Shown in pieces: positions 1,088 through 24,509 of a DNA stretch of 32,365 nt. Below the pieces are notes generated by a model. That model was not told the origin of the DNA. It saw nothing but the letters and a program-made list of their open reading frames with translations, and ran no database searches. This stretch comes from Neoechinorhynchus agilis. Taxonomy: Eukaryota > Animalia > Acanthocephala. The stretch lies in assembly GCA_051530055.1 (NCBI GenBank), contig CM121343.1:1-32365 (forward strand). Direction: 5' to 3'. The translations under genes and the position numbers were made by a program. Position 1 is the stretch's first letter, and every line of letters starts with the position of its first letter.

Positions 1088-1219
1088 CGATATTATGCAT
1101 ATTGGCCGAAAATGGAGGGTGCTATCAAAAGCAAGATAGGAACTTGTTTGATATGTCAAGCGAATCAACCGAATAAACCGTTGGGCCAGCGAGGTCCACG
1201 TGTACACGCTTCCATGGAT
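1088..1219 (+). mobile_element. Ty3/gypsy integrase zinc-binding (H2C2) fragment
   Basis: Translates YYAYWPKMEGAIKSKIGTCLICQ...RVH, matching the gypsy YW-P-x-M...C-x2-C-Q...RVH pattern that precedes the integrase core. Confidence 0.7.
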
Positions 1220-1700
1220 TCGTTGGCCAATCCCAACTCCCATTGCTCGAAGCTTCAACTTAGCTTTGATGAACCTAATTGTGACCATAATTTCTCTGAT
1301 ATTATCGATATAGCCGCACCCGTATCGTACTCCATTGTCACGAATCGTCCATTTATTTCCAGACTGATGCTTTTTGCTGCCGCATGTACTGATCCTTCCA
1401 TGTCCTCAATATTGTTAATCGTAATATCGTCCTCCGTGGAACCATTGATTTTACCTAATGATCTTTTTCGATTTCGGCAACAACGTCTGATATGTCCTTT
1501 TTGATTGCAACCATAACATTTCACATCTCTTGCCAAACATTCCCAAGGTTTCATGTGCGTAAAGCTTCCGCATCTTTCACAATTCGCGTTCGTATTTTGA
1601 ACCCTCGAGCTTCGATTTCCTGTTCTGGTCCTCGCGATTCGATCGACATTCGATTCCTCCCAAGCTCTTGTATCACTCCTTTCGTCCTCTGAGCTATCTA
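1215..1700 (-). mobile_element. Ty3/gypsy (K02A2.6/Mag-like) gag zinc knuckles + aspartic protease fragment
   Basis: Minus frame gives CERCGSFTHMKPWEC and CYGCNQKGHIRRCC knuckles followed by protease YDTGAAISII...LW. Confidence 0.85.
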
Positions 1701-1728
1701 AAATGTCGTGGCTACCTTTAACACTTGC

Positions 1729-1975
1729 TCAAATGTTGGGTACCTCAATGTTGATGTTCTCTTCATTAACTGTCCACTGTATGTGTGGATCTTGACTGTT
1801 AAGTTCAGCATTTAGTGAATCTCTGTTGTTGTTGTTAGAATCAGTCAGAATGAATACATCGTCCACATAACGCCACCACCGATTTGCATGACTATGAAGC
1901 TCCAAGATAGTAGACTCCCAATCTCGTATGTAGATGTTGCCCAAGGTTGGGGTTAGGGCGCTAATCCGAAACTAC
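1729..1975 (-). mobile_element. Penelope-like element reverse transcriptase fragment
   Basis: SALTPTLGNIYI...WWRYVDDVF...LNSQDPHIQWTVNEE matches the PLE RT motifs (SPxLANIYM, RYVDD, LN-x4-I-x-FT-x-E). Confidence 0.85.
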
Positions 1976-2299
1976 CATTTTGTCCCCTTCCGTGTGGAAA
2001 CGTACCTTGGGAGAGTCGGCACTGGCCCTCGTGGAGGACTTGGGGAAACGAATCAACGGGGCGACTGGAGAGCCAAGATCGACTTCGTTCCTAGCCCAAA
2101 AAATAAGCAGTGCGGTGCATCGGGGCACCACCATTTTAGCCAGCGCCGATGAATATAAGCGGAGAGGTTGTAAACAATGCATAGATAAATTGTATACAAA
2201 TAAATTTATGATTGAACAATTTTATAAAATTGTAGATGTTATAGTCCCAGTTATCCCATAAGAGCAAGCGAGATGATTTCTGACGTTGAGGTGCGATGG

Positions 2300-3160: not shown

Positions 3161-6020
3161 GTGTTTAATGTGGATGGAGAGGTTGATTGTCCTTTATGGT
3201 TTTCCGGGCGCTGGTGGAGAAAAGAAGCAGCTCCGGCGGCCAGACAGCTACTGATAGTAGCCTGTCAACGCGGGGGTCGGTGTGCCGCTCCACTTGGTGA
3301 TGCGGCAGCGAACAGGAGAAAAAAAATCCACCAGTGCAACGGGAAAAAGCGAGGGCGTCGTTGCTCTCGCCGACGACTTGAGCGTCGAAATGAGCGAAAC
3401 TGTCGCCGGAGGCAACGAAAGCGTCAGTCGAAGCTCATCACCGTGGTGGGTACGGACTGTTCAGGTGGTGCTGACAGCCGGGAGCCCTTTGGCCCAGCTA
3501 TTTCAGATAGAAGAGGACTACGAATCGGATCCTTGAATTGTAGGAGTCTGCGAGCGCAATGGCGTAGGGGAACCCTGGCCAAATTGGCAAGGGACGCCAG
3601 AATGGATCTTGTGTTTTTACAAGAATTGCGCATAAGAGGGCAATCAGACACAGACGCAAATCAGGAGGATTTAGGAGGAGGCTGGTCATTCTTTTACCTA
3701 TCTGCGGACAGTCGAGGAAATGGAGGTGTAGGCGTTTGTTTATCACCCCGCCTCCGAAACTCAACACTTATGCTGCCATGGGAAAAATCCCAAGAGACGC
3801 TTAACTCAGCTTGACCATATATTGTTGAGACGTAGAGAAAAAATGTCGGGTTAAAAACGCTGACACATTCACAGTTGATGGGCTGTTAAGCGACCACAAG
3901 ATGGTGATGTGTCAGTTGAGCATGAGGGACTCGTTGTTCCGTACGCCTCAGCATCCTCCACGTCCGTTCTATGGCGCCCTCGCTAATGAGGAGAAGAGGA
4001 ACGAGTTCGATATCGAACTAGAGAATCAACTGAGCTCGATGCCAGCTGCTGAAACGGACATTGATTTTTATTACAAGTCAATCTGCGACGCAGTGACCGA
4101 AGCGGCCGAGAAAACCATCCCAAAAATGAGGCGTATAAAAGCTGCAATGGTTATATGGCAGGAGGACTGTGAATTTATGGCAATGGCTGAGCAGATCAAA
4201 ACTCTAAGAAAAAGAGGAAAACGATCTGAGGCTCGCATTGCAAGTCTTGAACTTGCCAACCTCTATAATGAAAAGCACAAAGCTTCGATAGAGGATGCAG
4301 TTCGCGGGATCGCATATAAGGAAGGTTTTGTTCGTACCTGCTTAGCATGGAGAACGATAAACATTCTCACAGGAAGATCCCAAAGACAGCCAACTTCGAT
4401 TGAAGGTCCCTCCACGGAAATCAGAAAAAAGAGAATCGTTAATTATTTTGCGGAAATTCTCAATTCGCCATTATCGTCTTTGGAAGTGAGTCCTGCACTT
4501 CCAAAAAGCGCAATCGCCAAAGCACTGAGGCATACTTCACTGGACCGATTTCCGTGAAGGAAGCGATCGCTGCGGCGAAAATGATGCGTGCGGGACGTGC
4601 ATCAGGCCCATATGGGATAATGGCAGAGGTACTGAGGTTTGAATCTATTGCCAGAAAAATCATACCAGTAATGAATGGCATAATGAATGGTGGCTCAGTA
4701 CCTCAAATCTGGCAAACGGCGCATTTAACAATGATCCCCAAGGAATGCCGCTCGACAAAGGTGGAGGACTACAGGGGTATATCCTTGATGTCCAACACGG
4801 CAAAACGTTTCAGCAACATTTTGAGACGCCGAATTCAGCCAATCTTCGAAGCGCTTCTAAGAATTGAACAGAACGGCTTCAGAAAAGATCGAGGCACCAC
4901 AGAGCGCATATTGGCTTTGAGGAAGATCCTCGAGGAGGCACGAATTCATCAAACGGATGTGACGCTGGTATTTGTTTATTTCCGTCGAGCTTTCGATTCG
5001 GTAAATCGAACGATGATTGGCGGTATCTTAAAGGAGTATGGAGTGCCGCCGATCATTGTCACATCCGCTTTGGCATTATATAAAAACACAATGTCCGCCG
5101 TCAAGACAGCTGACGGTTTGACTCTGCAGGGCGACGCATTGGCTCCTTTCCTCTTCATCTTGGTGCTTGACTGGGTAATGAGATGGGCACTACCGAATGA
5201 TGAAGATGGATTTCTTCTGTTTAGGAACAGAGATTGCAGGTATCCTGAGATACGCGCCTCCTACATGGCATATGCCGACGACATCGTATTGATGTCCTCA
5301 ACAGTCGAAGGAGCTCAACGCATGCTAAATGGACTGCGCGAGAGGGCGAGTATGATTGGTCTGACCATCAACTCGAAAAAGACGGAATTTTTGACGATTC
5401 CGCATGTCGCGCATACAGTCTATGGCGAAGGGCGGAATGGCGTTGAGCAATTAAAGCAGATAGAGCGGTATGCCTATCTGGGAGCTGTCGTTCCTGAGGT
5501 GAGTGCGGATGTCAGCCGACGGAGAGCTATAGCTTGGAGAGCAGTGGGGCAACTTAAAACACTGTTTGACAGTGAGTCTTTGCCAGATGAACTCCGTTCG
5601 CAGCTGTTCAGGGCTCTAATTGAGAGCAATCTCTACTAAAATGCAGAGACCTGGACACTGTTACCAACGGCGACGAGGCAGTTGGACCAAAATCATTCAT
5701 CTCTCTTGCGTGCGGCGTTAAAGGTCAGATGGTCAGATAAAGTAACCAACAAAGCACTGTATAAGAGAGCCGGAGTCCAACCGCCCAGTGAATATTTTCG
5801 CCACAGACGACTGCAGTTCATGAGCAATATAATTCGGTCCGAGGCATCTTGCCCACAGGTCGTGCAACATTTCCTTTTATGGAAGCCAACGACATTGTAT
5901 CGTAAAGGCAAAGGGAACTGTCGTACATGCGATGACCTGATTTTAAGAGACGCGAATTGTCCGCATAACAGGACTGCTGTCGTGTATTTTAGATCCCTTG
6001 CGGAGTCTAATTCTATTTGA
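3161..6020 (+). mobile_element. Near full-length but inactivated RTE-type non-LTR retrotransposon (APE + RT)
   Basis: APE motifs LRIGSLNCRSL, DLVFLQELR, GNGGVGV, QLDHIL, SDH. RT motifs YRGISL, QNGFR, RAFDSV, QGDALAPFLF, YADD. C-terminal LKVRWSDKVTN and RRLQF. Split over at least 4 frames with internal deletions (middle of APE; between KTADGLT and LQGD). Confidence 0.92.
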
Positions 6021-7577: not shown

Positions 7578-8582
7578 TCGCATCCACGCAAGACTACCAC
7601 TAGAAAGACTTTGAGCAAGCAGACTACATGGCTCCTTTTTACAAATTAATTATTTTCGTACTGAGGCAGAAAGGGAAAATGACCCAATTATCAATTTAGG
7701 TCTACAAACATTGGGCAAATGATATTAATTTAGGCATGAGCCTTGACGATAGCCGACACTCGTCGCATCCACGCAAGACTACCACTAGAAAGACTTTGAG
7801 CAAGCAGACTACATGGCTACTTTTTACAAATTAATTATTTTCGGACTGAGGCAGAAAAGGAAAATGACCCAATTATCAATTTAGGTCTACAAACATTGGG
7901 CAAATGATATTAATTTAGGCATGAGCCTTGACGATAGCCGACACTCGTCGCATCCACGCAAGACTACCACTAGAAAGACTTTGAGCAAGCAGACTACATG
8001 GCTACTTTTCACAAATTAATTATTTTCGGACTGAGGCAGAAAAGGAAAATGACCCAATTATCAATTTAGGTCTACAAACATTGGGCAAATGATATTAATT
8101 TAGGCATGAGCCTTGACGATAGCCGACACTCGTCGCATCCACGCAAGACTACCACTAGAAAGACTTTGAGCAAGCAGACTACATGGCTACTTTTCACAAA
8201 TTAATTATTTTCGGACTGAGGCAGAAAAGGAAAATGACCCAATTATCAATTTAGGTCTACAAACATTGGGCAAATGATATTAATTTAGGCATGAGCCTTG
8301 ACGATAGCCGACACTCGTCGCATCCACGCAAGACTACCACTAGAAAGACTTTGAGCAAGCAGACTACATGGCTACTTTTCACAAATTAATTATTTTCGGA
8401 CTGAGGCAGAAAAGGAAAATGACCCAATTATCAATTTAGGTCTACAAACATTGGGCAAATGATATTAATTTAGGCATGAGCCTTGACGATAGCCGACACT
8501 CGTCGCATCCATGCAAGACTACCACTAGAAAGACTTTGAGCAAGCAGACTACATGGCTACTTTTCACAAATTAATTATTTTC
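7578..8582. repeat. Tandem array, 185 bp unit, ~5.4 copies
   Basis: Motif cgcatcc recurs at 7579, 7764, 7949, 8134, 8319 and 8504 (period exactly 185); units differ by only a few substitutions. Confidence 0.98.
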
Positions 8583-8870
8583 TATGACAAACATTTAGAC
8601 GCGCGCCAAAACCTTAAACATATTAGAATTCTGTCGTTCTTGGTACCTTCCAAATCGCCATAAGTTTTCTATCCTTCCCGCTTGTTCCGGGAATCGCTCT
8701 ATTTTGCTCTCGGATGAATCGAGCGAATTTGGGGCTGATGTTTGATTCGATTTACCATTGTACCGAATACAAGCGGAAGCGTCTTTTTGCACGGTTGTAA
8801 TATATTGAAATCATTGGAAACGTTTTCCGATTAATGTTCTGCATTCGGGTCATAATTAGTGAAATGAATT
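8540..8870 (-). pseudogene. Fragment of unidentified repeated sequence family X (second copy at ~11780-12110)
   Basis: Collinear anchors tacttttcacaaatt (8558/11801), gtaccttccaaa (8643/11876) and cataattagtgaaat (8851/12090). Minus-strand peptides DRKLMAIWKV vs DRKRRAFWKV and FVKSSHVVCLL vs FVKSTNLVIVL. Confidence 0.55.
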
Positions 8871-8896
8871 GATTCTCTCAGTTGTAATATTCATCC

Positions 8897-9261
8897 TCTC
8901 ACTTGGATCATATATCCATTCGCGCAACTCCATCATTTCTTCGTGCATTAAACAAGCCTTTTTATATGTTCCTCATAAGGAGGGGACATCACAGGTATGA
9001 CCTTCAATAATCATTTTGGCCATAACTCTTCCAATGGAAATAAAATCGTTGATGTAACCTCTAGATCCGATCTTATCCGGTATAACAGTTTGCAAAGAAG
9101 TATATTTAAAAAGCCCTCTTCTGGGGTTCAGAGCTTCTTGCATAAATAAATTATGAAATTCTCTTAGAATGCCACCTCCATCAACACCATATTCTTCGAG
9201 ACCATATTGGTTAACCATAACTACATGCGGCTCTTTATAAAGCGAGAGAGTCGGATTATTT
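8897..9261 (-). pseudogene. Partial duplicate of the HECT-domain exon (source 19039-19478)
   Basis: 8985-9261 differs from 19203-19478 by 2 substitutions; two internal deletions of about 53 and 22 bp. Confidence 0.95.
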
Positions 9262-9789: not shown

Positions 9790-10050
9790 TATTCCATGTC
9801 AACATATCATGGAAGCAAATTTCCGCGATCGACGTCTGTTTGGCGAGGGATATTGTCACGCGTCGATCCAATGGGGCGAAACAACCATCCAAGAAGGAAT
9901 GAGAATTGTTATAGATCCGGTGAAAAGTAGGTTGAATAGGACGGATGAATTCGTGTGTGCCATCACGATTGGCCACAGCCCGGGTCCATTTACCGGACGG
10001 ATCATTAAAATCCCCGAAAAAGAGAACGTTCCCGTCCCATTGCTGTGGAT
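9790..10050 (-). mobile_element. C-terminal half of an APE endonuclease (CR1/L2-like LINE fragment)
   Basis: VLFFGDFNDPSGKW...IQPTFH...FLDGCF matches GDFN-x-P-x2-W ... PT ... LDL. Confidence 0.65.
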
Positions 10051-10084
10051 TGCACCTTCCGTCGATTGGCATCCAAAGTCGCGT

Positions 10085-11378
10085 GTCAGTTCGCCACCGA
10101 TCGATCAACTCTTGCCGCTTCAATTAGGAGTCGGAGTTCCTGCTGGAGCCGAGGCGGCCGTACTTGCAGCACGAGCGTATAGTCGAAACGGTATCCATAA
10201 GGGAATGGCAATTGTCATGCTTGATATGGAAAACGCGTTCAATTCAATATGCCGCACCGCGATGACAGAGGTTGTCCACCAGCACCTGCCAGAAATCTAC
10301 CAGTACGTGTCCTTGTGCTGCGACCAGTCCAGCATGCTGCTGTTCGGCGAGTCTCAGATCGAATCAGCAGAGGGTGTTCAACAAGGTGATTCTCTAGGTC
10401 CTCTGCTGTTCACATTGACGATCAATCATCTTGCATACAGCTCTGCCAGAGTTGTCGATTTGGTACCTCGACGACTGTTGCATCGGAGGGGAGATCGACC
10501 AGCTCATCCGCGACATCAAAAACATCTCCGAAATGCGTGCCGATATCGGACTATTCCTGAAAACGGACAAATGGGAAATGATTTCGTACGACCAAGAGGA
10601 TGCATCGAGACTGCTCACCGTACTACCCGGAGCAAAGAGAACTGCAATCGACTCAGCTGACATTCTCGGGTCTCTAATCGGTAACCTTTCCAACCTGGAA
10701 ACGTTCCTCTCAAAAGCTATCGATCAATGGCGGCTCACTGCCTCCAGGCTCTTGCACATCGCGCGACGCGACGCTCAGTTCATAATAGGACGTCTGAAGA
10801 CTTCTCCATGCTTCAAGTCAGTACTCACTAGGGATTTCGACAACTGCGTTCAATCAACCCTGTCAGAAGTCCTCAACCTACGGCTGCCCGACAAAACATG
10901 GAAACAGGCGACCCTTCCCATTCGATTCGGTGGTCCCTGGCATCCAGAGTGCCACCGAAGTAGCAATTCCTGCTTTTTCATCATCGATTTCGGCCTCTTC
11001 AGACCTTGTGCTGAAAATCATCCCACCACACACTCGACTAGAGTCACATCCACCACTTTAACTGATTGAAGCGCACGCTCAATGGACATCAGTGTTCGGG
11101 CAGGTCGTTCCAACGGAAACAATCTCCCAAAAACGTTGGACTGCCTTGCTCCACACTGCGTATTATCAGCAGCTTCTTAACTCATGTTCATCTCCCAACG
11201 ATAGAGCTCGTCTCTTGGCAGTCTCAGCTCCACACTCCAGCGACTTCTTGAAGGCTTTCCCAATTACATCTGTTGGCACGAGGCTGGATGACCAAGCCAT
11301 CACCGTCGCTGTGGGACTTCTGTTGGATATCGATTTCTCAGGCTCATAAACATGTCGGTGCCGTGGGACAGTGAATAG
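10085..11378 (+). mobile_element. CRE-clade (restriction-like endonuclease) non-LTR retrotransposon, RT portion, 5'-truncated and frameshifted
   Basis: LPLQLGVGVPAGAEAA, LDMENAFNS, EGVQQGDSLGPLLF, WYLDD, QATLPIRFGG, RARLLAVSAPHSSDFLKAFP; these motifs are typical of CRE/SLACS-type RT. Confidence 0.9.
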
Positions 11379-11733
11379 TGTGACCGAGTCACTAGTAGAC
11401 ATGTTCTATATTCTACACAAAACCGAACACGCACACCTACACATATTCGCGCATGCAGTTACTACTGTTTATCACCCGATCGATGACATGACGACATCAT
11501 GCCCACTATAACACTTTCACAGCGTCTTGGGATCTCCACTCACACTGTCCGTCCGCCTCTTCTTGAGCGCTCGAGCTCGGTTCTCCATGCGCTCTTCGCC
11601 CAGACGTCTTCATCCGCTTGTGTCATCTGCAGGTACCATCGCATATCGACAACAAACAGTTTTCACACCTCCTCATTGGGCACTCGATCCTTGCGTGTCA
11701 ATCCTGCGGACCATCTCAGCATCCGCATTTTGT
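11379..11733 (-). repeat. 3' terminal direct repeat: 143 bp TGTGA...TCACA core (11379-11521) plus 212 bp RTE-derived segment
   Basis: No difference from 15582-15936 seen by eye (offset 4203). The minus strand of 11522-11745 encodes KLAVNKMRMLRWSAGLTRKDRVPNEEV...MRWYL...DSVSGDPKTL, an RTE C-terminal region. Confidence 0.93.
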
Positions 11734-12805
11734 TGACGGCTAACTTGAATTTGCCCGCCGATTCAATGTTGAACTTCTTCAAGAACAATGACTAAATTGG
11801 TACTTTTCACAAATTGCGAAAAAATTTGAACGGGCGCTAAATCATTACCCAGACCGTGGATTCTTCTATTTTTTCGTACCTTCCAAAACGCCCTCCGCTT
11901 TCTATCGCTGCATTCGCGTTCCTCTCATCGTTCTTTTTTGTTCGTCGATAAGTCGAGCGATATTTGGAGAGGATAGTTGATTTCTACGTTCGTACCGAGG
12001 ACGAGCGAAGGTGTCTTAGCGCCTAAATGTGAGTAATTTTTCTCGAAATTTTGTGGCAGCGTCAATATTAAAATGTAATGGATATTGGGCATAATTAGTG
12101 AAATCAATTTGTTGCATTGACGAATTCTTTAAGATTTAACTGTCTTGTAGAATAAAAATGAACGCCTCGCCACGAATTTGATCCATGCGAAGATTTTGTT
12201 CGATTATTTCCAACCCGATAAGACGCGGAGAAATCCATCGGGATTCTTGATTTCTACGGATTAAGATCGGGCCAAAAATGTTGCTTGATTCCATTTCTCC
12301 TTACACTTAAAATAGAGAAGTGACTCCTGAAATTTGGCGTTTGAACACATGTCAATTAGCACTCTCATGTTGAACATTTATAGGATTTCATTGACCTTCA
12401 ACAACGGAAACTTTGAAGCTCTTCCGAAACACAATCTCGTTTTATCAATTGAGCCTCATAATGCAATCCCGAAAAAGTTAATTGAGCATTCATATACCGA
12501 TTTCTATTTTTTTAACAAAGTGAGCAATAATACAGATGCATTGCCAATTAAAAGTTGAGCCTATTTAATCATGTCGACTTCATCCGGTTTTCGATTGTAG
12601 GTGGTGTGATTTCCCTTTCTTATTCTAGTTGCGCTTCCTCCTCCTTTATTGATAGCAACATTCTGTACTCATTGAACCTGGACGTGAAGGTGCTCCACGG
12701 CGTTCGCCTGTACCCCTGCGCACGTGGACTTCGCTTGATGGCCTACTCTTGCCTTCACTATATTCATCAGCCCGCCAACTGGCTTGTTGAAGACAGTGCG
12801 CTCTT

Positions 12806-13887
12806 AGGTCCCATTAAGTATATTTGCTCTAAGTTCAAAACGTAATATGAATACCGAAGAAAAAAATGCTTTGATTGAGCATTTAAAGGTTGTCCCCTTT
12901 CATGTACAGGAAATGCCGGCCCCTCTTCAAGGTAAGAGTAATGCGGACCAGGCATTAGGTGCAACGTCGCACACTCAGGTCCAATTGCAAAGGCCGAAAA
13001 TAGAGGACTCCTGTGATTGTGAAGAAGCTGAAATACTGCTGCGTCTCAAGTACCTTCAAATCTTTGACGATCTGCTTTCGGAAGGCGCTTTGTATACAAA
13101 AAGGTTAGGAACGCATCTCAGTAAGGATGAAAAAGTATATTTAGACTTTAAAAAAATGATTTTAACAATAGATCCCCGAATTTAAGAATTACCGCAAGGT
13201 TTATGGGTTTCACAAATTTTTAAATGTTATCTAAAAAGACAAAATTGTGCAAATTCTTTGTAATAAAATTTTTGCATCGAATTGCATACACAAAAAGGAA
13301 TGCGATTTAAAATAAGCTTTTAATTTCTGACTCGGTAATCTGTTCATGAGTTGGGCGATATTATACTTTCAAAATACAAATTGGACGCTGAAAAGTTATA
13401 ATGCTCGCTTAGAAAGTATTTTCGATACCGGTATATGGTTACACTTTTAAAGATCGCAGTAGAAACGAAGACAACTAAAAATCAATTTGGCGGCTGGAGT
13501 ATTTCAATGGACCACGAACGACTACACAAACTCCTATTTTTAATCTCAACTTTTATTGGAATTTCATCCTTACTGAGATGCGTTCCTAACCTTTTTGTAT
13601 ACAAAGCGCCTTCCGAAAGAAGATCGTCAAAGATTTGAAGGTACTTGAGACGCAGCAGTATTTCAGCTTCTTCACAATCGCAGGAGTCCTCTATTTTCGG
13701 CCTTTGCAATTGGACCTGAGTGTGCGACGTTGCACCTAATGCCTGGTCCGCATTACTCTTACCTTGAAGAGGGTCCGGCATTTTTTGTACATGAAAGGGG
13801 ACAACCTTTAAATGCTCAATCAAAGCATTTTTTCTTCGGTATTCATATTACGTTTTGAACTTAGAGCAAATAAACTTGATGGGACCT
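12806..13887. repeat. Inverted repeat: arms 12806-13132 and 13562-13887, 429 bp spacer; arms are fragments of a zinc-finger-family gene
   Basis: The 312 bp core differs by 5 substitutions and 1 indel. Both arms translate to ...ALGATSHTQVQLQRPKIEDSCDCEEA.... 12940-13029 is 81/90 nt identical to 24321-24410. Confidence 0.95.
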
Positions 13888-14289
13888 TCGTTGACTACAC
13901 GTTACATAGTAAATATGCTATTACGTCTCTAAGAAACGACAACCAAGTAGTATGCTTACTGTTCTTTTTCGTCGCCGTCCTCGTTGTTGTTACATGCTGC
14001 CGCGCAAAATGTTCGCTGGGTGTTTTGTATACGATCAGATGTTGTTTCGTAAAAGTGTTGTGGTAGCACTCTTTCAATGTTTTCCGGTGTGAAGTCGCGA
14101 AAGGCCTCGGTGCAAATGAGTGCTTGCCATAAATTAAAAAATATGTCGGAGGTGTATTCAAGATCGTGCAACTTTGTTCCGGAGGAAAACAAACAATGGA
14201 GAATCCGACGTCAGTGAGGGCTAATCCATCGTTATTCAGTAAGCAATTTTTCTGATTGCTTGACGATAATCCTCTTCAATCAGTGCCTT

Positions 14290-15516
14290 CACAAAAATCG
14301 CATATTGCTCTCCCAAACAAACATCGACTGTTACAGGGCACTACATAGGCCTTGACTCTTTTTTTCGCTCCGCTGAGTTCCACTGTCAATTCACATTCTC
14401 CAAAATCCACGACTTTCGTCCCCCAAATCCCTTCGATTCTTTGCCCTTAAACAATATCGGACGTCCTACTTGTTCCCATACCTTTTTGTTAATAACGCTT
14501 ACCTCCGCTCCTGTATCGAATTGCATCTTGCAGTTGGCATTATTGATTTTGATCGCGATCTCCATTCTTTTGTTCTTTCTTTTATCGACCACGTCTAAGC
14601 TAATTTGCTCGTTGTCATCTTGTGCACCTTCCAATGGTGCCAAGTCGACCACCCACATTTTCGAGCAAAATGTCCTATTCGCTTGCACTTGTAGCATCGA
14701 GCTCGCTCCGCTGGGCATCTTGATCGGAAATTATGTGCAATGCCGCATTTTCTACATTTCCGGGCGCTTATCGTTGCTTCGTTTCGCTTCCCTCCGCTAT
14801 CTCCATCTGTCGATCGTCGATTAAATCTCATTCCTGTTCTTTGCTCCAATCTATTGATATCGTGCTCCATTTTTAATTCTTTAGGTTTTCCCCCAATAAT
14901 TTTCTGGGCTTTCTCACTTGCTTCCATCGCGTGGGCCAATTCTAATAACTTTTGTGGTGTTCTTGCACTGCATCGCGGTCTTTCTGAATGTCTCATTGGA
15001 TATTCGGAGGATAACCAGGTCTTTGATTCTATCATCCACGGCTTTCAACTCATCATCAATCTCTTTTGAGAAAAAGTTGCATTCTCTTGCAGCTCCTCGC
15101 ATATCAGCCACCCATTGTGCATGTGTTTCGCCTTCATGTTTATTTTTCGAATTGAAAATGTATCTGGCCAATATTTCCAATGCCTCAGCTTTTTAATATT
15201 CATCCACTAGCCGGATAATGTCCTTATTTGCGAACTTCGTTATCCCCTGTGCTGCCATCAATTTTTTTATCAGCTTGTATGTTTCGGCACCGACCCATGC
15301 AAGCATATTTGCCTTTTTGGTTCCATATTCGATCACTCCATTAGCTTCCATATACTGGTTCATTTGTTCAACATATTCTGCCCAATCCTCCTGCTCCGGC
15401 TCGTATCGTCTGAATGCATTTATCCCTCTCCCCTGTCCATATGCATCCAATTCGCCTTTTCCGTGCATTGATCTCATGAGCTCCATCATTGCTGCTTCTG
15501 TTGCTGCCGCATCCAC
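14290..15516 (-). mobile_element. Ty3/gypsy (K02A2.6/Mag-like) gag + protease, frameshifted
   Basis: EDWAEYVEQMNQYMEANGV, ARYIFNSKNKHEGET...DMRGAARECNF, knuckles CRKCGIAHNFRSRC and CYKCKRIGHFARKC, protease FDTGAEVSVI...GECELTV...YVVP...LFGR. Confidence 0.92.
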
Positions 15517-15565
15517 TCCCTCATCATGTTCGCTTGATCCTTTATGATCTGCTGCAACATTTGAG

Positions 15566-15579
15566 CACCCTCGTTGCCA
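15566..15579 (-). promoter_or_regulatory. Primer binding site, probably tRNA-Ser(GCT)
   Basis: Minus strand reads ...TCACA-TT-TGGCAACGAGGGTG, 2 nt after the LTR end. From recalled metazoan tRNA-Ser(GCT) sequences this is one mismatch from the complement of the 3' end (TGGCGACGAGG...). Confidence 0.8.
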
Positions 15580-15581
15580 AA

Positions 15582-15936
15582 TGTGACCGAGTCACTAGTA
15601 GACATGTTCTATATTCTACACAAAACCGAACACGCACACCTACACATATTCGCGCATGCAGTTACTACTGTTTATCACCCGATCGATGACATGACGACAT
15701 CATGCCCACTATAACACTTTCACAGCGTCTTGGGATCTCCACTCACACTGTCCGTCCGCCTCTTCTTGAGCGCTCGAGCTCGGTTCTCCATGCGCTCTTC
15801 GCCCAGACGTCTTCATCCGCTTGTGTCATCTGCAGGTACCATCGCATATCGACAACAAACAGTTTTCACACCTCCTCATTGGGCACTCGATCCTTGCGTG
15901 TCAATCCTGCGGACCATCTCAGCATCCGCATTTTGT
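15582..15936 (-). repeat. 5' terminal direct repeat (143 bp core 15582-15724 + RTE-derived segment)
   Basis: Same sequence as 11379-11733; directly abuts the PBS. Confidence 0.93.
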
Positions 15937-16495
15937 CGGTGCGGTGGGACAGTGAATAGGTCGGGGACTCACGGCCTTGACTGCAAGCGTTCAAATGCAC
16001 GCCACGCATGGCACTCAGCAGTCAACCACATAATTAAGGAAGCCCTCTCAACGACCGGTTTTCCCGCTCGATTCGAACCAATCGGACTTTCTCGGAAAGA
16101 CGGTAATCGCCCTGATGGAGCGACTCTCCTCCCATGGTGTTGCGCGAAAATACTGGTTTGGGATTGTACTTACCCCAACACGCTCGCAGCATCCCACTTA
16201 CTGGATTCCACTTCAAAGCCGGTAGCAGTCTCCAGCTTCAGCAAGGAATAGAAGCGGCATAAGTACTCCTAGCTCGATGGGCATCAATATATATTCATCC
16301 CGATTGCGGTGGAAACGCTGGGATGCATCGGAAAAGAAGCCGATTATTTCCTTTGTCGACTGGGAAAGATGCTAAAACATGCTACCGGCGATATGCGCTC
16401 CAGTAGCTGTTGCAGCGAATCAGCGCGGCGGTCCAACGCAGCAATGCCGCGGCCATCAAGGAAGCTGCTGAGCAATCATAAAAACGTATTCCATT
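15934..16495 (+). mobile_element. CRE-clade element, 3' part: zinc knuckle + restriction-like endonuclease
   Basis: CRCGGTVNRSGTHGLDC, RH, EP, RPDG...LVWDCT, FIPIAVETLG and terminal RISAAVQRSNAAAI; resumes where the left part stops. Confidence 0.9.
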
Positions 16496-18303
16496 AGCTA
16501 AAATGATTGGCATTGATATCCTCGGCCCATTCCTCTTCAGACGCTAGGATCAAAGCGTTGAAGATGGCGATTATATTTTCTAAGCTGAGGACATTAGTAG
16601 CTTTAAAGGGGATAGAAGACCCATTATTCGAAACTTTGTCCCTTGATTTCCAACATAGAATAATATCCGAACTTTTCAGATCGAATCGACTCGCTTTAAT
16701 TGGTAAATAAACGCCCACCTAAGATTCCCTATGACAACCGTTTGCATGGGTAGCACAGAGTGCTTTTATGACATTCTCGAGGCCATCACATTTATTCCAG
16801 GAGGAAGCAGCCTTTTGTCCAAGTTAAAGACGAACCAATCAAGCCACAATCTAATCCTTTACCCGTGGCAAAAACCAAGTTGATGAACCGCATTGTGTTC
16901 AATACGTATGACGATTTGTTAGCTGTTCAGAATATAAATCGGAGGACGTCCAGATAAAGATGAGTATAACCGAATATTTGAGAATTTTTTTGACAAGCCC
17001 TTTCTTCAACCAATCAATATGACCAAGCGCACTTCCCGTTTTCCATCTGAAAATCTTTCTCGAGTGTTTAACAAATCACCAAAAAAGGACAATTTTCTCT
17101 CGGAAAGCAAGTTCAATGCCCATCAATGGGAGTGCGAATGTCTGAATGCGTAATCGTAATGAACGAAAACCTGAAAACTCAAAATCCGCGCCATACCCAC
17201 CAATCCATGTGCCTATAAGATACAATTTCTATTAAAGTTGAATAAAAAGAATGATATTTTGCCAAGGGCTTCAAACGGTGAATTGAATCGCAGAAATTCA
17301 ATAACTCACAACTTCGATCTTCCTAAAATTGATTGTGTCATTTAAACGTCACGCTTGATCTTGGCGAAAGGCTCTTGTTGTGCCCTCCTAAAGAAGAATA
17401 AGGCACGAAATTTTAGACTACGGGAATGTTCACTAAGAGTTTTAATCGATGTTACACATCCGCTCCTTTTGTCAACGGAGTCTTGCATATTGAAGTGAAC
17501 ACATCACTTACAAAGCTCCCTCCAATCCGGGCCGGGGAAGATGGATAAAATCAATCATAACACCAACTTGAACAATACGGTTGTGGGTTTTCACATGGCT
17601 TTGAATTCTCAAATACCGACCTAAACTGCGATTTAGGCTTCAAGTCCACCTCGGCACAACTGCGGAATGTGCAAACTCTGCCATTTTTTAGCCTGTTAAA
17701 GGTATTTTATCCTATGTCGGACTAGCCAGTTACCTTCTTATTTTCGAAGTGTCGAAGTGAACATGTTTAAGTGACTAAATCACATTCCTGAGCAGGGGAA
17801 ATCAGCCACCCGGCTAGCCTAAGAGAAAAAGGAATTGTGTAAATCCGAACAGACGAAGTCCACCTGAACAACGTCCCGCTTTCATATGCACCTTTCTCGG
17901 AGAACTAAGCAATCTTCACTATCCTTCGAAAAAAGAACAAATGACTTGGCCCAGAAAAGTGGTGTCATTTCCCCGATTGCCAAATGACAGTCTCCCTCTG
18001 TGTAAACAATGGTGTTTTTCTAAAAATATATTTCTTTAAATATGAAAGAGTGAGTTTTTGGGTCTCATGACTCTATTTAATTTGTTCAGCTTTTAAAGAT
18101 TTTTAAAAGCAAGTTTTACCATTTGGGGGAAAACAGCTCACTGAAGAAGTTAGTTCAGTAGTGTTAAGTCATTAAAATTTAATAAAAAGTATGCTTTCAG
18201 CGGAATTGATACTCTTTTACGCATAGGTTTTATTGGCTGAAGTCATTTTAGTTCGTTAATACCAGTTTCGACCATATATATACATATTTGCTTTAGTCCG
18301 CTG

Positions 18304-21300
18304 TTATGCAAGTTCAAAACCTGATTGGGCTCGAATACTCTGCAAAAGTCTTGTTCGCATGATATGTTTGTTTTCATACGGTGGGAGGCCTAACGCATTA
18401 ATGCACGTTTGAGCCGTTGGCCATCGCTCAGTATCACGACCGAAATCACCGACGGTGAAAGGCGGATTAAGTCCGGCAAATCCCGACATTGGTAATCTAT
18501 CTGAGCTTGTAACAAATTTCAGGAGCAACCGTCTTTCTTCGTTAGTGAAGTTGTTTAAGACGTCCCAAAATAGTATAATAACCGGGTGTTCGGAGTGGTA
18601 CGCGCCAGTGTAGTTCGCACATTCACGCCATTCAATGCAATCCAAAGTGGTAATCGCACGTCCGTTAATTAGAATTTGAAACTCGTCTGGATTAAACACT
18701 TGTAGCATTTGGAACGGTTTCGTTCCTAGAACGTGAGACATTCCGAGGCAAATGGCATTCGACTGCTGAATCATCGAATCATAAAGCACATTCTTGACCA
18801 TTTTATGTACAAACGAGTGTAAGACATTGGTTTTTCTCACCTTATTGCAATGGGAGCAGCCATTGGAAAAAACCAATGGATAAAACCTTTTTGCACAGAA
18901 TACCGTCTTGTTCACCCTCAACGTAATCGGCCATGTTGATCCCAATTTCAGACAGCTGATCATCAGTCATTGTACATAAAGAAGATAGTCCATAGTAGAG
19001 ATCATCATCAACTCCCAATAGCTGTTTTATGCGGAAATTCTCACTCGGATCACATATCCATTCGCCCAACTCCATCATTTCGTCGTGCATTAAACAAGCC
19101 GCTTTATACTTTGAATTTCGAAATTCGGGATCGCGAGAAAATCGGGCGCAATGAGATCGGATGTTCCTCATAAGAATTTCTAGGAAATTCTCAGAGATGG
19201 GAACATCACAGGTATGACCTTCAATAATCATTTTGGCCATAACTCTTCCAATGGAAATAAAATCGTTGATGTAACCTCTAGATCCGATCTTATCCGGTAT
19301 AACAGTTTGCAAAGAAGTATATTTAAAAAGCCCTCTTCTGGGGTTCAGAGCTTCTTGCATAAATAAATTATGAAATTCTCTTAGAATGCCACCTCCATCA
19401 ACACCATATTCTTCGAGACCATATTGATTAACCATAACTACATGCGGCTCCTTATAAAGCGAGAGAGTCGGATTATTTGTATAGGAAAGAAGTCCGTCTT
19501 CGTAAATATGATTTCGTCTTATAGCAATCGGTTGCTCACCATGATGAGCCGGGGTGCTAGGTGTGTGGTGCACTCGGGCGATTTTCTCTATCATTTCAAG
19601 TCTCCGACCGAGATATACCAAGAAAGGAGCCTGTCGTAGCAGAACAGTGGTAAACATATCATTGAGCGACAATTTAGCATTTGTCCAAGTATTTGATTGT
19701 ATAAACAAGCGCGGAAACGAGCCTTCGTCGGTATACATTTCAAGCTGGAGTGTTTTGTAGTCGCGGTTGTAGATTGCAGGATCACCGAGTAGCACCGTCT
19801 CTGATTGTCGAATAAAATTGACTTTATCAGTTGCATTTTTGCAATCTCGAAAATAGAAATCTCTCACGGCTGTTAAAAAGTAAGATAAGCTGTAGCTAAG
19901 AATGAATTTGCTAGATAGTGTATTCCTGTCGCAATTGGAAATCTTCACCTTAGCCACTATTGTTTGCACGCAATCTAAGTATGATTGAAGACAAATGGGA
20001 TAGAGGCTGCGACAGTCACATTGATCAGTGTCAACCATATACAAATACTTGCTCATTAGCAACAAACATCCCTCCAAGACTCCGTTTACGTGGTCATTCA
20101 AATTCATAACTTTCAAAAGATGTTTCGTGAGATCTTGAGCCATTCTTACCATGTCAACATTTGCCAATAATTTCATTAAATATCCGTGAATGGCTTTTAT
20201 ACATGGATTTGAATCATTTCGGTTAGCGGAGGTACTGCACATTTTTGCTAAGTGCCATATAAATGAAAAAAACGAACAAATAACTCTATTCGAACGAGCG
20301 GATAAAATGTCGAATTCCGGATCCTGAATTCGATCGAGCCAACAACCTATATGACAGTACATTATTTTAGCAATATCGGTTTGACATCGGGTTTTTAAGC
20401 TTGGCACCTTGGTTACATTCAGCCAAAGAAGTGGTAGAGTTTCGTTATAGAGGAGAAAGTAATCATCTGTCGCCCTGCACATGGATTTTCCCCTCTGAAT
20501 GATTGTATGTTTCATGCACTGGATAATCAATGGAAATGTGAATTCAGATATATACGTAAGTGAACACTCAGAATCCGCTTCAGAATCATCAAAAAGATCC
20601 AGCTGAAAGCAAAGAAGTATGTCGAATCGAAATTCATAAGGATCTTCCTGGTACACAGACGACATAATTTTACATAACGCTGGGAAATCAACATTCTTAT
20701 CATCACCGTTGGCAAATAAAGTTAATCCATGCATCAGCGCACCGGGACCCTTGATCAAACCCTGCTCGGTTCGACCATATTTTACTGCAATGATCGTATT
20801 AGTTTACAAGGACGAAACAATTCAAATTTGCTTGATTTCTAAATAATAACCCTTCAAACTGTTTGGAGTCATACGAACGAGCGCTACCATGATAACTTGA
20901 AATGATAAAATCGGAGGACAAAATCTAATTAACAACAACAAAGTTTCATAGGTCTGCAAATTCAAAAAGTATTAAATCACTACGCTTTAATTTAATAAAA
21001 ATTTAGAAGATTAGGACCATGTTTAAAAATTGGCTGATTTATCAATTTGCAAATAAAAATTATCTTTAAATAGTCTGTTAAATTTGGAATAAAGAGCAAA
21101 TGTTTAATGTCGATGTGCCATTCGTTTCGTCATTCAGAGCAATGAAAACTTTGGCTAGCTGCTACGGGGACAATACCCGAGTTTTAGATTTCAGAAATAC
21201 AAGCTTCTATCATCAACCATTTTTAAATAAAATGAAAACCTACAAGACTTGGAGAATAAGCATCTATGATATTTATTGCACCTCACCCCATGAAATTTCG

Positions 21301-22689: not shown

Positions 22690-22960
22690 TTCGGCCTAAT
22701 AACTCCATCGAATAGCTGAAGCGTACAAGAAGGATCCATGTCCGAAAATGGTTTCAATACAAAACGCGCGCGCGCGCGTCGACACCGCATAGAAACAACT
22801 GCGATTCTTCTGTGTTCTTGTTGTGTGCATGGTCTGAGTTTTAATAAATCTTCTGGGAGTCGCATGCGATGGTACCTCCCGGTGACAGAGGCAGATGAGG
22901 ACGCAGCTCGAGGGGAAAGGTGGGAGGACAGTGTGAGCGGAGATCTCAAAACGTTGGGAG
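22690..22960 (+). mobile_element. Decayed, internally deleted RTE 3'-end fragment
   Basis: RHRIETT...RMRWYLPVTEADEDA...RWEDSVSGDLKTL; shares MRWYL and DSVSGD with the RTE segment inside the 355 bp repeats. Confidence 0.7.
22765..22778. repeat. (CG)7 microsatellite
   Basis: cgcgcgcgcgcgcg read directly. Confidence 0.95.
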
Positions 22961-23477
22961 AGAACAAAGACGAAAACCGACAATGCTGAAAAGAACCACC
23001 TCTCAAGTGAGAGAAAAGTTCAAAGAAATATTGTTTGTGAGTGTTCAACATTTGCGACGTGCAACCCGCACACACAAGTGACCAAATGATCAAACAGATC
23101 AACTCCGCATCTTCCCAAATGTCCTGCTCGAGAGTTACATTCTTTTCGTTTCAATTGGCAGTACTTCAATGAGCCATTTTCAAGAACTCGAGTTCAATGA
23201 ACAAAAAGAAAACCTGTCAAAAGTTACTGTTTTTTGGTATTATCGAATGCGGGTTTCCATGAATACGAGATAAAAAGGAGCTGCTTTGGGTTACAAACAT
23301 TCGAGGAAACGAGCAATTTTCGCTCATGAGCTCTACTATAAGATTTATAGTTAAACAACCTTAGACTGAGGTTATGGCCATTATATAGTTTTTATGTATA
23401 CTTTCTCGACGAAGGACAAAAATTGAACAAGCTTTGAAAGTTAGTTCATCAACTTAATGTGGTTTTGGGCAATCAAA

Positions 23478-23542: not shown

Positions 23543-24105
23543 TGTCAGGAAGGGCATCCGACCGTAAAACCTTGAGCTAGAAACACATCAGCAATGTCAA
23601 GTCTAATAACTCCGATCGATCGGGCTTGTTTATTAGGTCATGCCACGCGCAAACCCGGCGGCCGGAGTTTGTGAAAAAAATTCAGGGTTACCGGATCAAC
23701 GACGGGTCCGGCTAAAGAAGCGAGTCGCTTTCAAAATACGAATCGGCACCCTGAACGTAGGTTCAATGACCGGGGGAAGCAGGGAAGTGGCCGACTTGAT
23801 GAGGAAGAGAAAAATCGAAATTCTTGGCGTTCAGGAGGTTAGATGGAAAGGAGGAAAGGCTAGAGAATTAGGCGACGGATTTAAACTGTTCTATAGTGGA
23901 GGAGCAAGTGGTAGGAACGGAGTGGGCGTCATAGTATCAAAGGATTTAGGGGACAGCGTCGTGGAGGTGACACGGACTATCGATCGGATGATGGCGCTGA
24001 AGGTAAGCGTTAACGGCGAAGCTACAGCAATAGTTTCTGCGTATGCCTCCCAAGTCGGTTGTAGTGAAGAGGAGAAGGAATTTTGGCTGGATTTATCGGA
24101 AGTTA
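23478..24105 (+). mobile_element. 5' end of an RTE LINE (5' UTR + APE N-terminal half), 3'-truncated
   Basis: IRIGTLNVGSMTG, EILGVQEVRWKG, FKLFYSG...RNGVGVIV, DRMMALK, IVSAYASQVGCSEEEKEFW; ends abruptly. Confidence 0.92.
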
Positions 24106-24106
24106 C

Positions 24107-24410
24107 AGAAATAGAAAAAGTATGAAGCACATGACGGCGTTGTTCACATTTTGCTCGAAGCTGAAGCTCGAGCAACAATCGATGTTTATGTGGAAGTGGA
24201 GAAAAATTATATATCCAAGAATCACTTTTATAATTTTCCCCCACTCACATATTCATGGATTTTATCTTTAAAAATCGATGATTATATATTGGAAAGACAT
24301 CGTCAGTCAAGTCAGAGGAGAATGGGGACCATGCATTTGGTGCAACATCGCACACTCAGGACCAATTGCAAACGCCGAAAATGGAGGACTCCTGCGATTG
24401 TGATGAAGCT
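24107..24410 (+). pseudogene. Fragment of a paralog of the C2H2 zinc-finger gene
   Basis: RNRK-YEAHDGVVHILLEAEARATIDVY...ILERHRQSSQRR vs RNRKKYEPHEAVVEVLPEEEAKATIDMYILERHRHSSHRR of the 29.7-31.3 kb gene; frameshifts and a 96 bp insertion. Confidence 0.85.
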
Positions 24411-24509
24411 ATAATCGACGAGCAATTTTTATTTGTGTTCTCCGATCTACAGTTGAAGTTGTTCACTGTGACAATTTGCGGTTTACGTTAAATGCCATAA
24501 ATTGCCTGC

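What the first reader, a model, noticed from the sequence alone, without database searches (positions are those of the whole stretch)
11379..15936. Non-autonomous LTR retroelement that replaced pol with captured host-type cargo
Architecture on the minus strand: 355 bp repeat, PBS, gag, protease, ~2.5 kb non-retroelement cargo, identical 355 bp repeat (seen). The cargo includes zinc-finger-family fragments in inverted repeat, a family X copy and unassigned gene-like frames. Identical terminal repeats normally indicate recent reverse transcription (established), yet gag-pro carries several frameshifts. This suggests a defective element mobilised in trans while carrying host sequence, i.e. LTR-mediated transduction in an invertebrate (inference). 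This is the best candidate for an undescribed system in the window.
Basis: partly seen in the sequence, partly recalled or inferred. Interest (0 to 1): 0.85.

Follow-up and report, generated by a model that had tools for sequence, protein, structure and literature searches.

The report
Pol-less Gypsy retrotransposon, odd insertion junction
This is a defective Ty3/Gypsy-type jumping gene in the thorny-headed worm Neoechinorhynchus agilis that kept its end repeats, gag and protease but lost its copying enzymes; this kind of element is well known, and only its unusual insertion junction is mildly interesting.

Summary
Window 11379-11733 and 15582-15936 are 100% identical 355-bp direct repeats. 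On the minus strand they bracket a PBS-like site, a Ty3/Gypsy-type gag with a CCHC knuckle, a protease, and 2.56 kb with no RT, RNase H or integrase.

The whole unit interrupts a dead R2/CRE-like (RLE-type) non-LTR element. Joining the two flanks restores a reading frame colinear with uninterrupted homologues, so it is one discrete insertion.

Gag-protease has three frame changes and in-frame stops.

The "host cargo" claim is not supported. The filler has no Pfam hit and no protein homologue. Its two identifiable pieces are copies of local repeats. The zinc-finger link rests on adjacency only.

Trans-mobilisation is plausible: the unit has zero LTR differences against 2.4% divergence between its internal inverted-repeat arms. 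It could not be tested, because no other genome copy was reachable. The hybrid ONT/Illumina assembly of pooled worms could also have made the repeats look identical.

The junction is non-canonical. It has a 23-bp target duplication (26 with TGT) carrying one mismatch, a canonical CA only at U5, and six A-rich bases before the first TG at U3.

This is a new member of a known kind (Bs1, ETn, IAP 1-delta-1, LARD).

The parts
15582..15936 (-). 5' LTR copy (355-bp repeat). The first six bases in element sense (ACAAAA) may be a polypurine-tract remnant, which would leave a 349-bp TG...CA LTR.
   Evidence: 100% identical to 11379-11733. It ends ...GGTCACA and is followed by TT then TGG. TG occurs only at repeat positions 7-8.
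15566..15579 (-). Primer-binding-site-like sequence TGGCAACGAGGGTG, two bases after the 5' LTR.
   Evidence: Read directly. A 13/14 match to the 3' end of a eukaryotic tRNA-Ser(GCU) is recalled from memory and was not tested. The window holds no tRNA gene.
14953..15516 (-). gag N-terminal part, with an in-frame stop at 15193-15195. It is annotated in GenBank as ACOME3_008570: exon 1 at 15816-15747 inside the LTR, exon 2 at 15548-15193.
   Evidence: P0001 is 99% identical. The segment is homologous to the gag region of Ty3/Gypsy polyproteins.
14655..14960 (-). gag C-terminal part with a CCHC zinc knuckle, in a different frame from gag-N.
   Evidence: Pfam zf-CCHC, E=0.003, below the gathering score. 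tblastn frames.
14291..14640 (-). Aspartic protease. The N-half carries DTGA and ends at the stop at 14386-14388. The C-half (LFGR...) lies in yet another frame.
   Evidence: Pfam gag-asp_proteas E=1.2e-4, Asp_protease_2 and RVP, all below the gathering score. tblastn. The C-half was read by eye.
11734..14290 (-).
   Evidence: No Pfam hit on either strand, no RT/RH/IN by tblastn, no homologue for its ORFs, no poly-A tract.
11757..12120 (.). Repeat family "Y" inside the filler, lying next to the 3' LTR.
   Evidence: 64-70% identical to window 8522-8880, E=5e-27.
12806..13887 (.). Inverted duplication: arms 12806-13132 and 13562-13887, with a 429-bp AT-rich spacer.
   Evidence: 97.5% complementary, with 7 substitutions and 1 indel. 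No flanking target duplication. About 110 nt of each arm is 85-90% identical to 24307-24415.
11379..11733 (-). 3' LTR copy. There is no purine run directly upstream apart from AACAAAA.
11353..11378 (+). Left copy of the duplicated target: TGT plus 23 nt, reading CRCRGTVN in the host ORF.
15934..15959 (+). Right copy of the duplicated target. TGT is shared with the end of the repeat. There is one mismatch, and this copy keeps the conserved Gly codon.
9809..11378 (+). Host of the insertion, left part: a decayed RLE-type non-LTR retrotransposon (RT domain through the CxC motif).
   Evidence: Pfam RVT_1 E=2e-9. The best PDB hits are R2 proteins, E=0.003. Alignment.
15960..16500 (+). Host of the insertion, right part: the C-terminal zinc-knuckle and restriction-like endonuclease region.
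   Evidence: Colinear with P0002-P0007.

Best explanation
The 4.56-kb unit is a pol-deleted derivative of a Ty3/Gypsy (Metaviridae-type) LTR retrotransposon of Neoechinorhynchus agilis. Its layout is LTR, PBS, broken gag, broken protease, 2.56 kb of non-coding repeat-rich filler, then LTR. It lies on the minus strand as one discrete insertion inside a dead R2/CRE-like non-LTR element.

Shown: the anatomy, the absence of RT/RNase H/integrase, the broken frames, the discrete insertion, and the 23-bp target duplication.

Inferred, about 0.55: the unit was already defective and already carried the filler when it was last reverse-transcribed, so RT and integrase came in trans from an autonomous relative.

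Inferred, about 0.35: the insertion was only half canonical. The U5 end was joined at its CA as integrase would do. The U3 end still carried about six bases of polypurine-tract remnant (ACAAAA before the first TG). It was joined 23 nt away through ACA/TGT microhomology, and gap filling produced the long duplication.

The filler is best read as a patchwork of other genomic repeats, not a captured gene.
For: Anatomy:
- The 355-bp terminal repeats are identical.
- CA, then TT, then TGG follow the 5' copy.
- gag is homologous to 1797 proteins. The full-length ones have PR-RVT_1-RT_RNaseH-Integrase_H2C2-rve order.
- Polyprotein tblastn covers only 15480-14377.

Discrete insertion:
- The joined flanks align without a gap to uninterrupted homologues P0002-P0005. 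The C-x-C-x9-H spacing is kept.
- 23 nt of target lie on both sides, in the 5'-stagger geometry of integration.

Defective before the last cycle:
- The LTRs show 0 differences in 355 bp. The internal inverted-repeat arms show 8 differences in 327 bp. At the arms' divergence about 8.7 LTR differences would be expected, so P(0) is about 2e-4.
- There are three frame changes plus stops in 1.2 kb of gag-PR.

Junction:
- TG occurs only at repeat positions 7-8.
- The last 20 nt of the repeat match the target at 13/20, including TGT.
- A diverged LTR-like copy at 22.79 kb also has an A-rich run before TGCG.
- Tf1 cDNAs are known to keep PPT nucleotides and to insert without integrase at sites resembling the PPT, sometimes with 5' LTR truncation (PMC11042837).
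Against: - No second copy and no autonomous partner could be looked for. gag has only one close hit, which is this locus. Exact-protein look-ups found nothing. A metagenome scan found nothing.
- The genome is a MaSuRCA hybrid assembly of Illumina and ONT R9.4 reads from about 50 pooled worms (PMC12690905). Consensus building could have made the two repeats identical or introduced indels.
- There is no convincing polypurine tract next to the 3' LTR.
- The LTR lacks a TG start if the whole 355 bp is LTR.
- A 23-bp duplication is not what integrase makes.
- The duplication carries a mismatch although the LTRs carry none.
- The downstream flank shows no PBS homology, unlike the Tf1 integrase-independent events.
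- The 10/17 similarity beyond TGT is only p about 3e-3 and could be chance.
Confidence: 0.65

Rival explanations
1. An autonomous Gypsy element inserted here and then decayed in place. Pol was lost by deletion and filled with other DNA. The two LTRs were kept, or made, identical by gene conversion.
For: The window is a transposon graveyard with other rearranged pieces. These include a second Gypsy remnant that also lacks RT/RNase H (1866-1182) and a recent gene-fragment duplication (8982-9261 against 19199-19478). The target duplication carries one mismatch although the LTRs carry none.
Against: The filler shows no nested-insertion hallmarks: no target duplication around the inverted repeat and no poly-A tract. 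Zero LTR divergence against 2.4% between the arms requires conversion confined to the LTRs.
Confidence: 0.2
2. Assembly artefact. The second repeat copy, the perfect identity or the frameshifts come from hybrid assembly or polishing of pooled, polymorphic worms.
For: The assembly is a MaSuRCA hybrid of Illumina and ONT R9.4 reads from about 50 individuals, with very little HiFi data and Hi-C scaffolding.
Against: The structure is internally coherent: CA-TT-TGG after the 5' copy, the insertion exactly bounded by the repeats, and flanks that rejoin in frame. A mis-join would not be expected to produce this. No Ns lie in the window.
Confidence: 0.08
3. An ordinary segmental or tandem duplication of 355 bp, unrelated to reverse transcription, that happens to enclose a Gypsy fragment.
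For: Only the bare fact of a direct repeat. The region also holds a 185-bp tandem array.
Against: The repeats are exactly co-terminal with a discrete insertion into an ORF. One repeat is followed by a PBS-like site and gag in the right orientation. The end next to the flank is CA.
Confidence: 0.04

Closest known systems
Maize Bs1 (a pol-less LTR retrotransposon carrying transduced host gene segments)
   Same: Both have LTRs plus a gag-side coding remnant, no RT or integrase, and foreign DNA in place of pol (PMC13317346).
   Different: Bs1's cargo is demonstrably three host gene fragments that form an expressed chimeric ORF. Here the filler has no gene homology at all. Bs1 is from a plant and a different lineage.
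Mouse ETn/MusD, IAP 1-delta-1 and VL30 (non-autonomous ERVs mobilised in trans)
   Same: These are defective LTR elements whose internal region is partly non-retroviral or deleted. They are copied by proteins from autonomous relatives and are often more active than the helpers (PMC6466679).
   Different: Their helper, copy number and new insertions are documented. Here none could be examined. They are vertebrate class I/II ERVs, not Ty3/Gypsy.
LARDs and TRIMs (large retrotransposon derivatives; terminal-repeat retrotransposons in miniature)
   Same: They have LTRs, a PBS and a non-coding internal domain, and they are non-autonomous (established knowledge; named in PMC13317346).
   Different: LARDs and TRIMs have no gag or protease. 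This unit keeps a recognisable though broken gag-PR.
Integrase-independent or one-ended cDNA insertion (Tf1 in S. pombe; also reported for HIV-1)
   Same: The cDNA end retains primer (PPT) nucleotides. The upstream flank resembles the PPT end. The 5' LTR edge is non-canonical (PMC11042837).
   Different: In Tf1 the downstream flank resembles the PBS and no regular duplication is described. Here the U5 end is a clean CA, a 23-bp duplication is present, and the pathway was not tested.

Membership tests
LTR retrotransposon, Ty3/Gypsy (Metaviridae-type) derivative | Long terminal direct repeats bounding the element | tested here: met
   355 bp, 100% identical, co-terminal with the insertion.
LTR retrotransposon, Ty3/Gypsy (Metaviridae-type) derivative | LTR termini 5'-TG...CA-3' | tested here: inconclusive
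   The U5 end is CA. The repeat starts ACAAAA, with TG only at positions 7-8. The feature is met only if those six bases are not LTR.
LTR retrotransposon, Ty3/Gypsy (Metaviridae-type) derivative | tRNA primer-binding site just inside the 5' LTR | tested here: inconclusive
   TGGCAACGAGGGTG lies two bases after the LTR. The match to tRNA-Ser is from memory only. No tRNA of this species was available.
LTR retrotransposon, Ty3/Gypsy (Metaviridae-type) derivative | Polypurine tract abutting the 3' LTR | tested here: not met
   Only AACAAAA (6 of 7 purines) is adjacent. The next purine run, GAAGAAG, lies 38 nt upstream.
LTR retrotransposon, Ty3/Gypsy (Metaviridae-type) derivative | 4-6-bp target-site duplication | tested here: not met
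   The duplication is 23 bp (26 with TGT) with one mismatch.
LTR retrotransposon, Ty3/Gypsy (Metaviridae-type) derivative | gag with CCHC knuckle and a D-T/S-G aspartic protease, homologous to Gypsy polyproteins | tested here: met
LTR retrotransposon, Ty3/Gypsy (Metaviridae-type) derivative | pol in the order RT, RNase H, integrase (autonomy) | tested here: not met
   No similarity in 11734-14377 by Pfam or tblastn. The element is therefore non-autonomous.
Non-autonomous, trans-mobilised LTR element (ETn / IAP 1-delta-1 / LARD type) | Several copies with the same defective interior at different sites | not testable with these tools
   The N. agilis genome is not in any searchable DNA collection. 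Searches found nothing beyond this locus.
Non-autonomous, trans-mobilised LTR element (ETn / IAP 1-delta-1 / LARD type) | An autonomous partner sharing LTR, PBS and packaging region | not testable with these tools
   The window holds only a roughly 70%-identical LTR-like fragment (22783-23101), which lacks the PBS and adjacent gag.
Gene-transducing LTR element (Bs1 type) | Internal segment demonstrably derived from host gene(s) | tested here: not met
   No Pfam hit or protein homologue. The arm ORF does not match the zinc-finger protein. Only repeat-to-repeat similarity was found.
Host element: RLE-type non-LTR retrotransposon (R2/CRE/NeSL group) | RT domain followed by a C-terminal Cys-His motif and restriction-like endonuclease region | tested here: met
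   RVT_1 E=2e-9. The best PDB hits are R2 proteins. The C-x-C...H...C, RPDG and WD.T blocks align with homologues. Assignment to the CRE clade itself was not tested.

The most novel reading that the evidence does not exclude
This is a natural germ-line record, in an acanthocephalan, of a pol-less Gypsy derivative copied in trans. Its cDNA entered the genome by a half-canonical route. One end was joined at CA. The other end still carried polypurine-tract bases and was joined by microhomology 23 nt away, giving a long target duplication. The element also carries a 327-bp-arm inverted repeat which, if transcribed from the LTR, would form a long hairpin RNA.
Probability: 0.25. Interest if true: 0.5.

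Novelty: new member of a known kind. Interest (0 to 1): 0.3.

Why it matters
Transposable elements of Acanthocephala are barely described, so this is a usable first example of a non-autonomous Ty3/Gypsy derivative in the group. If other copies exist, they would show that an active helper element is present in N. agilis. The junction, with its 23-bp duplication and a possible PPT remnant on the 5' LTR, would be a rare natural footprint of non-canonical cDNA insertion in an animal germ line, which is otherwise known mostly from yeast and cell-culture experiments. Nothing here points to a new class of mobile element or to gene transduction.

Tried and rejected
1. The 355-bp repeat is CRE-derived. 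This was prompted by a 43-nt, 79% match between the left flank and the repeat end plus right flank. It was rejected for the repeat body: an hmmsearch with a profile of CRE-like homologues found nothing in the six frames of the repeat, and DNA alignments did not exceed shuffles. Only the last 20 nt show 13/20 matches.

2. The start of the repeat resembles the target downstream of the duplication. This is not significant.

3. The true LTR extends upstream of the 3' copy. There is no significant homology between that upstream region and the diverged LTR-like copy.

4. The cargo is zinc-finger gene fragments. The arm ORF does not match the zinc-finger protein. Only the neighbouring 24046-24321 piece does.

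5. The cargo encodes something. Pfam on both strands, a k-mer/HMMER search with nine concatenated ORFs and Rfam all gave nothing.

6. The inverted repeat is a nested foldback or MITE insertion. No flanking duplication was found.

7. The arms are under coding constraint. There is no codon-position bias, and the third copy has indels.

8. Integrase-independent insertion of the Tf1 type at both ends. The downstream flank does not resemble the PBS.

9. Finding other copies. Exact-protein look-ups and a metagenome pattern scan returned only this locus or nothing.
Full report
**Source**

The gag N-terminus matches one GenBank protein, ACOME3_008570 of Neoechinorhynchus agilis (Acanthocephala), at 99% identity. 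Its encoding record is CM121343.1 of assembly GCA_051530055.1. The fetched locus equals window 5193-25816 at 100% identity, with the same coordinates. The window is therefore the first 32 kb of that 7.8-Mb scaffold. The assembly is a MaSuRCA hybrid of Illumina and ONT R9.4 reads from a pool of about 50 worms, with very little HiFi data. It was scaffolded with Hi-C and annotated with BRAKER after repeat masking (PMC12690905). This bears on every argument below that rests on perfect identity or on single-base indels.

**Observation**

A self-comparison of the window gives one perfect 355-bp direct repeat, 11379-11733 = 15582-15936. It also gives an inverted repeat, 12806-13132 / 13562-13887, at 97.5%.

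Read on the minus strand, the right-hand copy ends ...GGTCACA. It is followed by TT and then TGGCAACGAGGGTG (15579-15566), the usual position of a tRNA primer-binding site. From memory this is 13/14 complementary to the 3' end of a eukaryotic tRNA-Ser(GCU). That is a lead, not a test, because the window has no tRNA gene.

**Coding content**

Six-frame Pfam scans find only a CCHC knuckle and the N-half of a retroviral-type aspartic protease on the minus strand. They find nothing in 11734-14300 on either strand.

A full HMMER search with the 200-residue gag segment finds 1797 relatives at E<=1e-3. Six long relatives all have the order protease, RVT_1, RT_RNaseH, Integrase_H2C2, rve, which is Ty3/Gypsy architecture. 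tblastn with eleven such proteins against the window covers only 15480-14377 within the unit. RT, RNase H and integrase are therefore absent, not merely diverged.

The surviving genes are broken as follows:
- gag-N (15435-14953) carries an in-frame stop at 15193-15195.
- gag-C with the knuckle (14960-14655) is in another frame.
- The protease N-half returns to the first frame and ends at a stop at 14386-14388.
- The protease C-half is in the third frame, by eye.

**A discrete insertion**

The plus-strand flanks belong to a decayed non-LTR retrotransposon. It has an RVT_1 domain (E=2e-9), and its best PDB matches are R2 proteins (E=0.003).

I joined the left flank (ending ...TCRCRGTVN at 11378) to the right flank (starting RSGTHGLDCK at 15960) and searched with the joined sequence. 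Four uninterrupted homologues cover 81-86% of it. They align without a gap across the joint, and the C-x-C-x9-H spacing is preserved.

So 11379-15959 is one insertion. The 23 nt CGGTGC[C/G]GTGGGACAGTGAATAG occur on both sides (11356-11378 and 15937-15959), with TGT ambiguous between repeat end and target. The right copy keeps the conserved glycine codon and the left copy is the changed one.

This rules out an ordinary segmental duplication. It also rules out a deletion joining two separate elements, because the flanks of such products would not rejoin.

**Is the repeat itself CRE-derived?**

A 43-nt, 79% match between the left flank and the repeat end plus right flank raised this question. A profile of the homologues finds nothing in the six frames of the repeat. 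Alignments of the repeat ends to the target do not exceed shuffles. Only the last 20 nt match at 13/20. Without TGT that is 10/17, p about 3e-3. This is either chance or the microhomology used for joining.

**The junction**

The geometry matches integration. Each 3' end of the insert is joined to a different target strand with a 5' stagger, but the stagger is 23 nt instead of 4-6.

The U5 end is a clean CA, and the internal 5' copy still has the two extra bases (TT) before the PBS, as expected after integrase processing. The U3 end is not canonical. The repeat starts ACAAAA, and TG appears only at positions 7-8.

The simplest reading is that the LTR proper is 349 bp (TG...CA) and that ACAAAA is the end of the plus-strand primer region, copied onto the outer edge of the 5' LTR. 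A diverged LTR-like copy at 22783-23101 likewise has an A-rich run before TGCG.

In fission yeast, a fraction of Tf1 cDNAs retain PPT nucleotides. Integrase-independent insertions occur at sites resembling the PPT or the PBS, sometimes with truncated 5' LTRs (PMC11042837). Here the upstream side fits that picture. The downstream side does not, because it shows no PBS similarity. I therefore propose a half-canonical event: U5 joined by integrase, and U3 joined through ACA/TGT microhomology. This is inference, and I give it about 0.35.

**The filler**

The filler runs from 11734 to 14290, is 30-42% GC, and has no poly-A tract. Its ORFs have no homologue among 5.8 billion proteins, and Rfam finds nothing.

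Two pieces can be identified:
- 11757-12120 is 64-70% identical to 8522-8880 (E=5e-27). That locus sits beside a 185-bp tandem array.
- About 110 nt of each inverted-repeat arm is 85-90% identical to 24307-24415.

The 24.3-kb copy abuts a pseudogene piece (24046-24321) related to the zinc-finger ORF at 29705-30913 (tblastn E=1e-8). The arm ORF itself has no similarity to that protein. The arm differences show no codon-position bias. The inverted repeat has no flanking duplication.

"Host-type cargo" is therefore unsupported. The filler looks like a patchwork of dispersed repeats.

**Was it moved as a defective unit?**

The LTRs show 0 differences in 355 bp, while the arms show 8 in 327 bp. At the arms' divergence, 8.7 LTR differences would be expected, so P(0) is about 2e-4. 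The inverted duplication therefore predates the event that made the LTRs identical.

Three frame changes plus stops in 1.2 kb are also too many for the time since that event. If the event was reverse transcription, the unit was already pol-less and broken, and its RT and integrase came in trans.

Two escapes remain: gene conversion confined to the LTRs, or consensus artefacts of the hybrid assembly.

Copy number and a helper could not be examined:
- gag has no other close hit.
- Exact-protein look-ups of element ORFs are not on record.
- A metagenome scan for the LTR core found nothing.

**Comparison and verdict**

Pol-less LTR elements that keep LTR and PBS and are copied by helpers are well established. 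Examples are ETn/MusD, IAP 1-delta-1 and VL30 in mouse (PMC6466679), Bs1 and BARE-2 in plants (PMC13317346), and LARDs and TRIMs.

This unit works like these. It fails the Bs1-type membership test on demonstrable host-gene cargo. It fails two canonical LTR-element tests, the 4-6-bp duplication and the adjacent PPT.

It is a new member of a known kind in a poorly studied phylum, with one curious junction. Interest is 0.3.

Noticed in passing
window 7578-8582: A 185-bp tandem array, 5.4 copies, 99% identical. The first 60 nt or so of the unit overlap repeat family Y (8522-8880), which is also present in the element's filler.
   Followed up: partly
window 8897-8966 and 8982-9261 versus 19039-19108 and 19199-19478: A 91% / 98.9% identical copy of coding sequence of the neighbouring HECT-ligase gene lies 10 kb from its source and lacks about 75 nt. 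This is a recent gene-fragment duplication, directly beside the Y repeat.
   Followed up: partly
window 1182-1866: A second Ty3/Gypsy remnant. gag-C and protease (1866-1261, minus strand) are joined directly to integrase fragments (1238-1182 on minus, 1088-1180 on plus), so RT and RNase H are also missing.
   Followed up: partly
window 22783-23101: A diverged copy, about 70% identical, of the LTR on the plus strand. It shares the core blocks but lacks the PBS and has no gag after it.
   Followed up: partly
window 15193-15816, minus strand: The GenBank gene model ACOME3_008570 starts inside the 5' LTR (exon 1, 15816-15747). It splices over a GT-AG intron (15746-15549) that removes the U5 end and the PBS. 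It then reads the gag N-terminus up to the in-frame stop.
   Followed up: partly
window 24046-24321 and 29705-30913: A pseudogene piece related to the C2H2 zinc-finger ORF at 29705-30913 (tblastn E=1e-8). It lies next to the 110-nt repeat shared with the element's inverted-repeat arms.
   Followed up: yes
window 3161-6020 and 23640-24125: An APE-plus-RT non-LTR retrotransposon split over four ORFs (3161-6020, plus strand). A separate APE-domain fragment lies at 23640-24125.
   Followed up: no
window about 1950-2260, plus strand: A second 3' fragment of the same kind of RLE-type non-LTR element as the one hosting the insertion. This was read by eye from the ORF translations.
   Followed up: no
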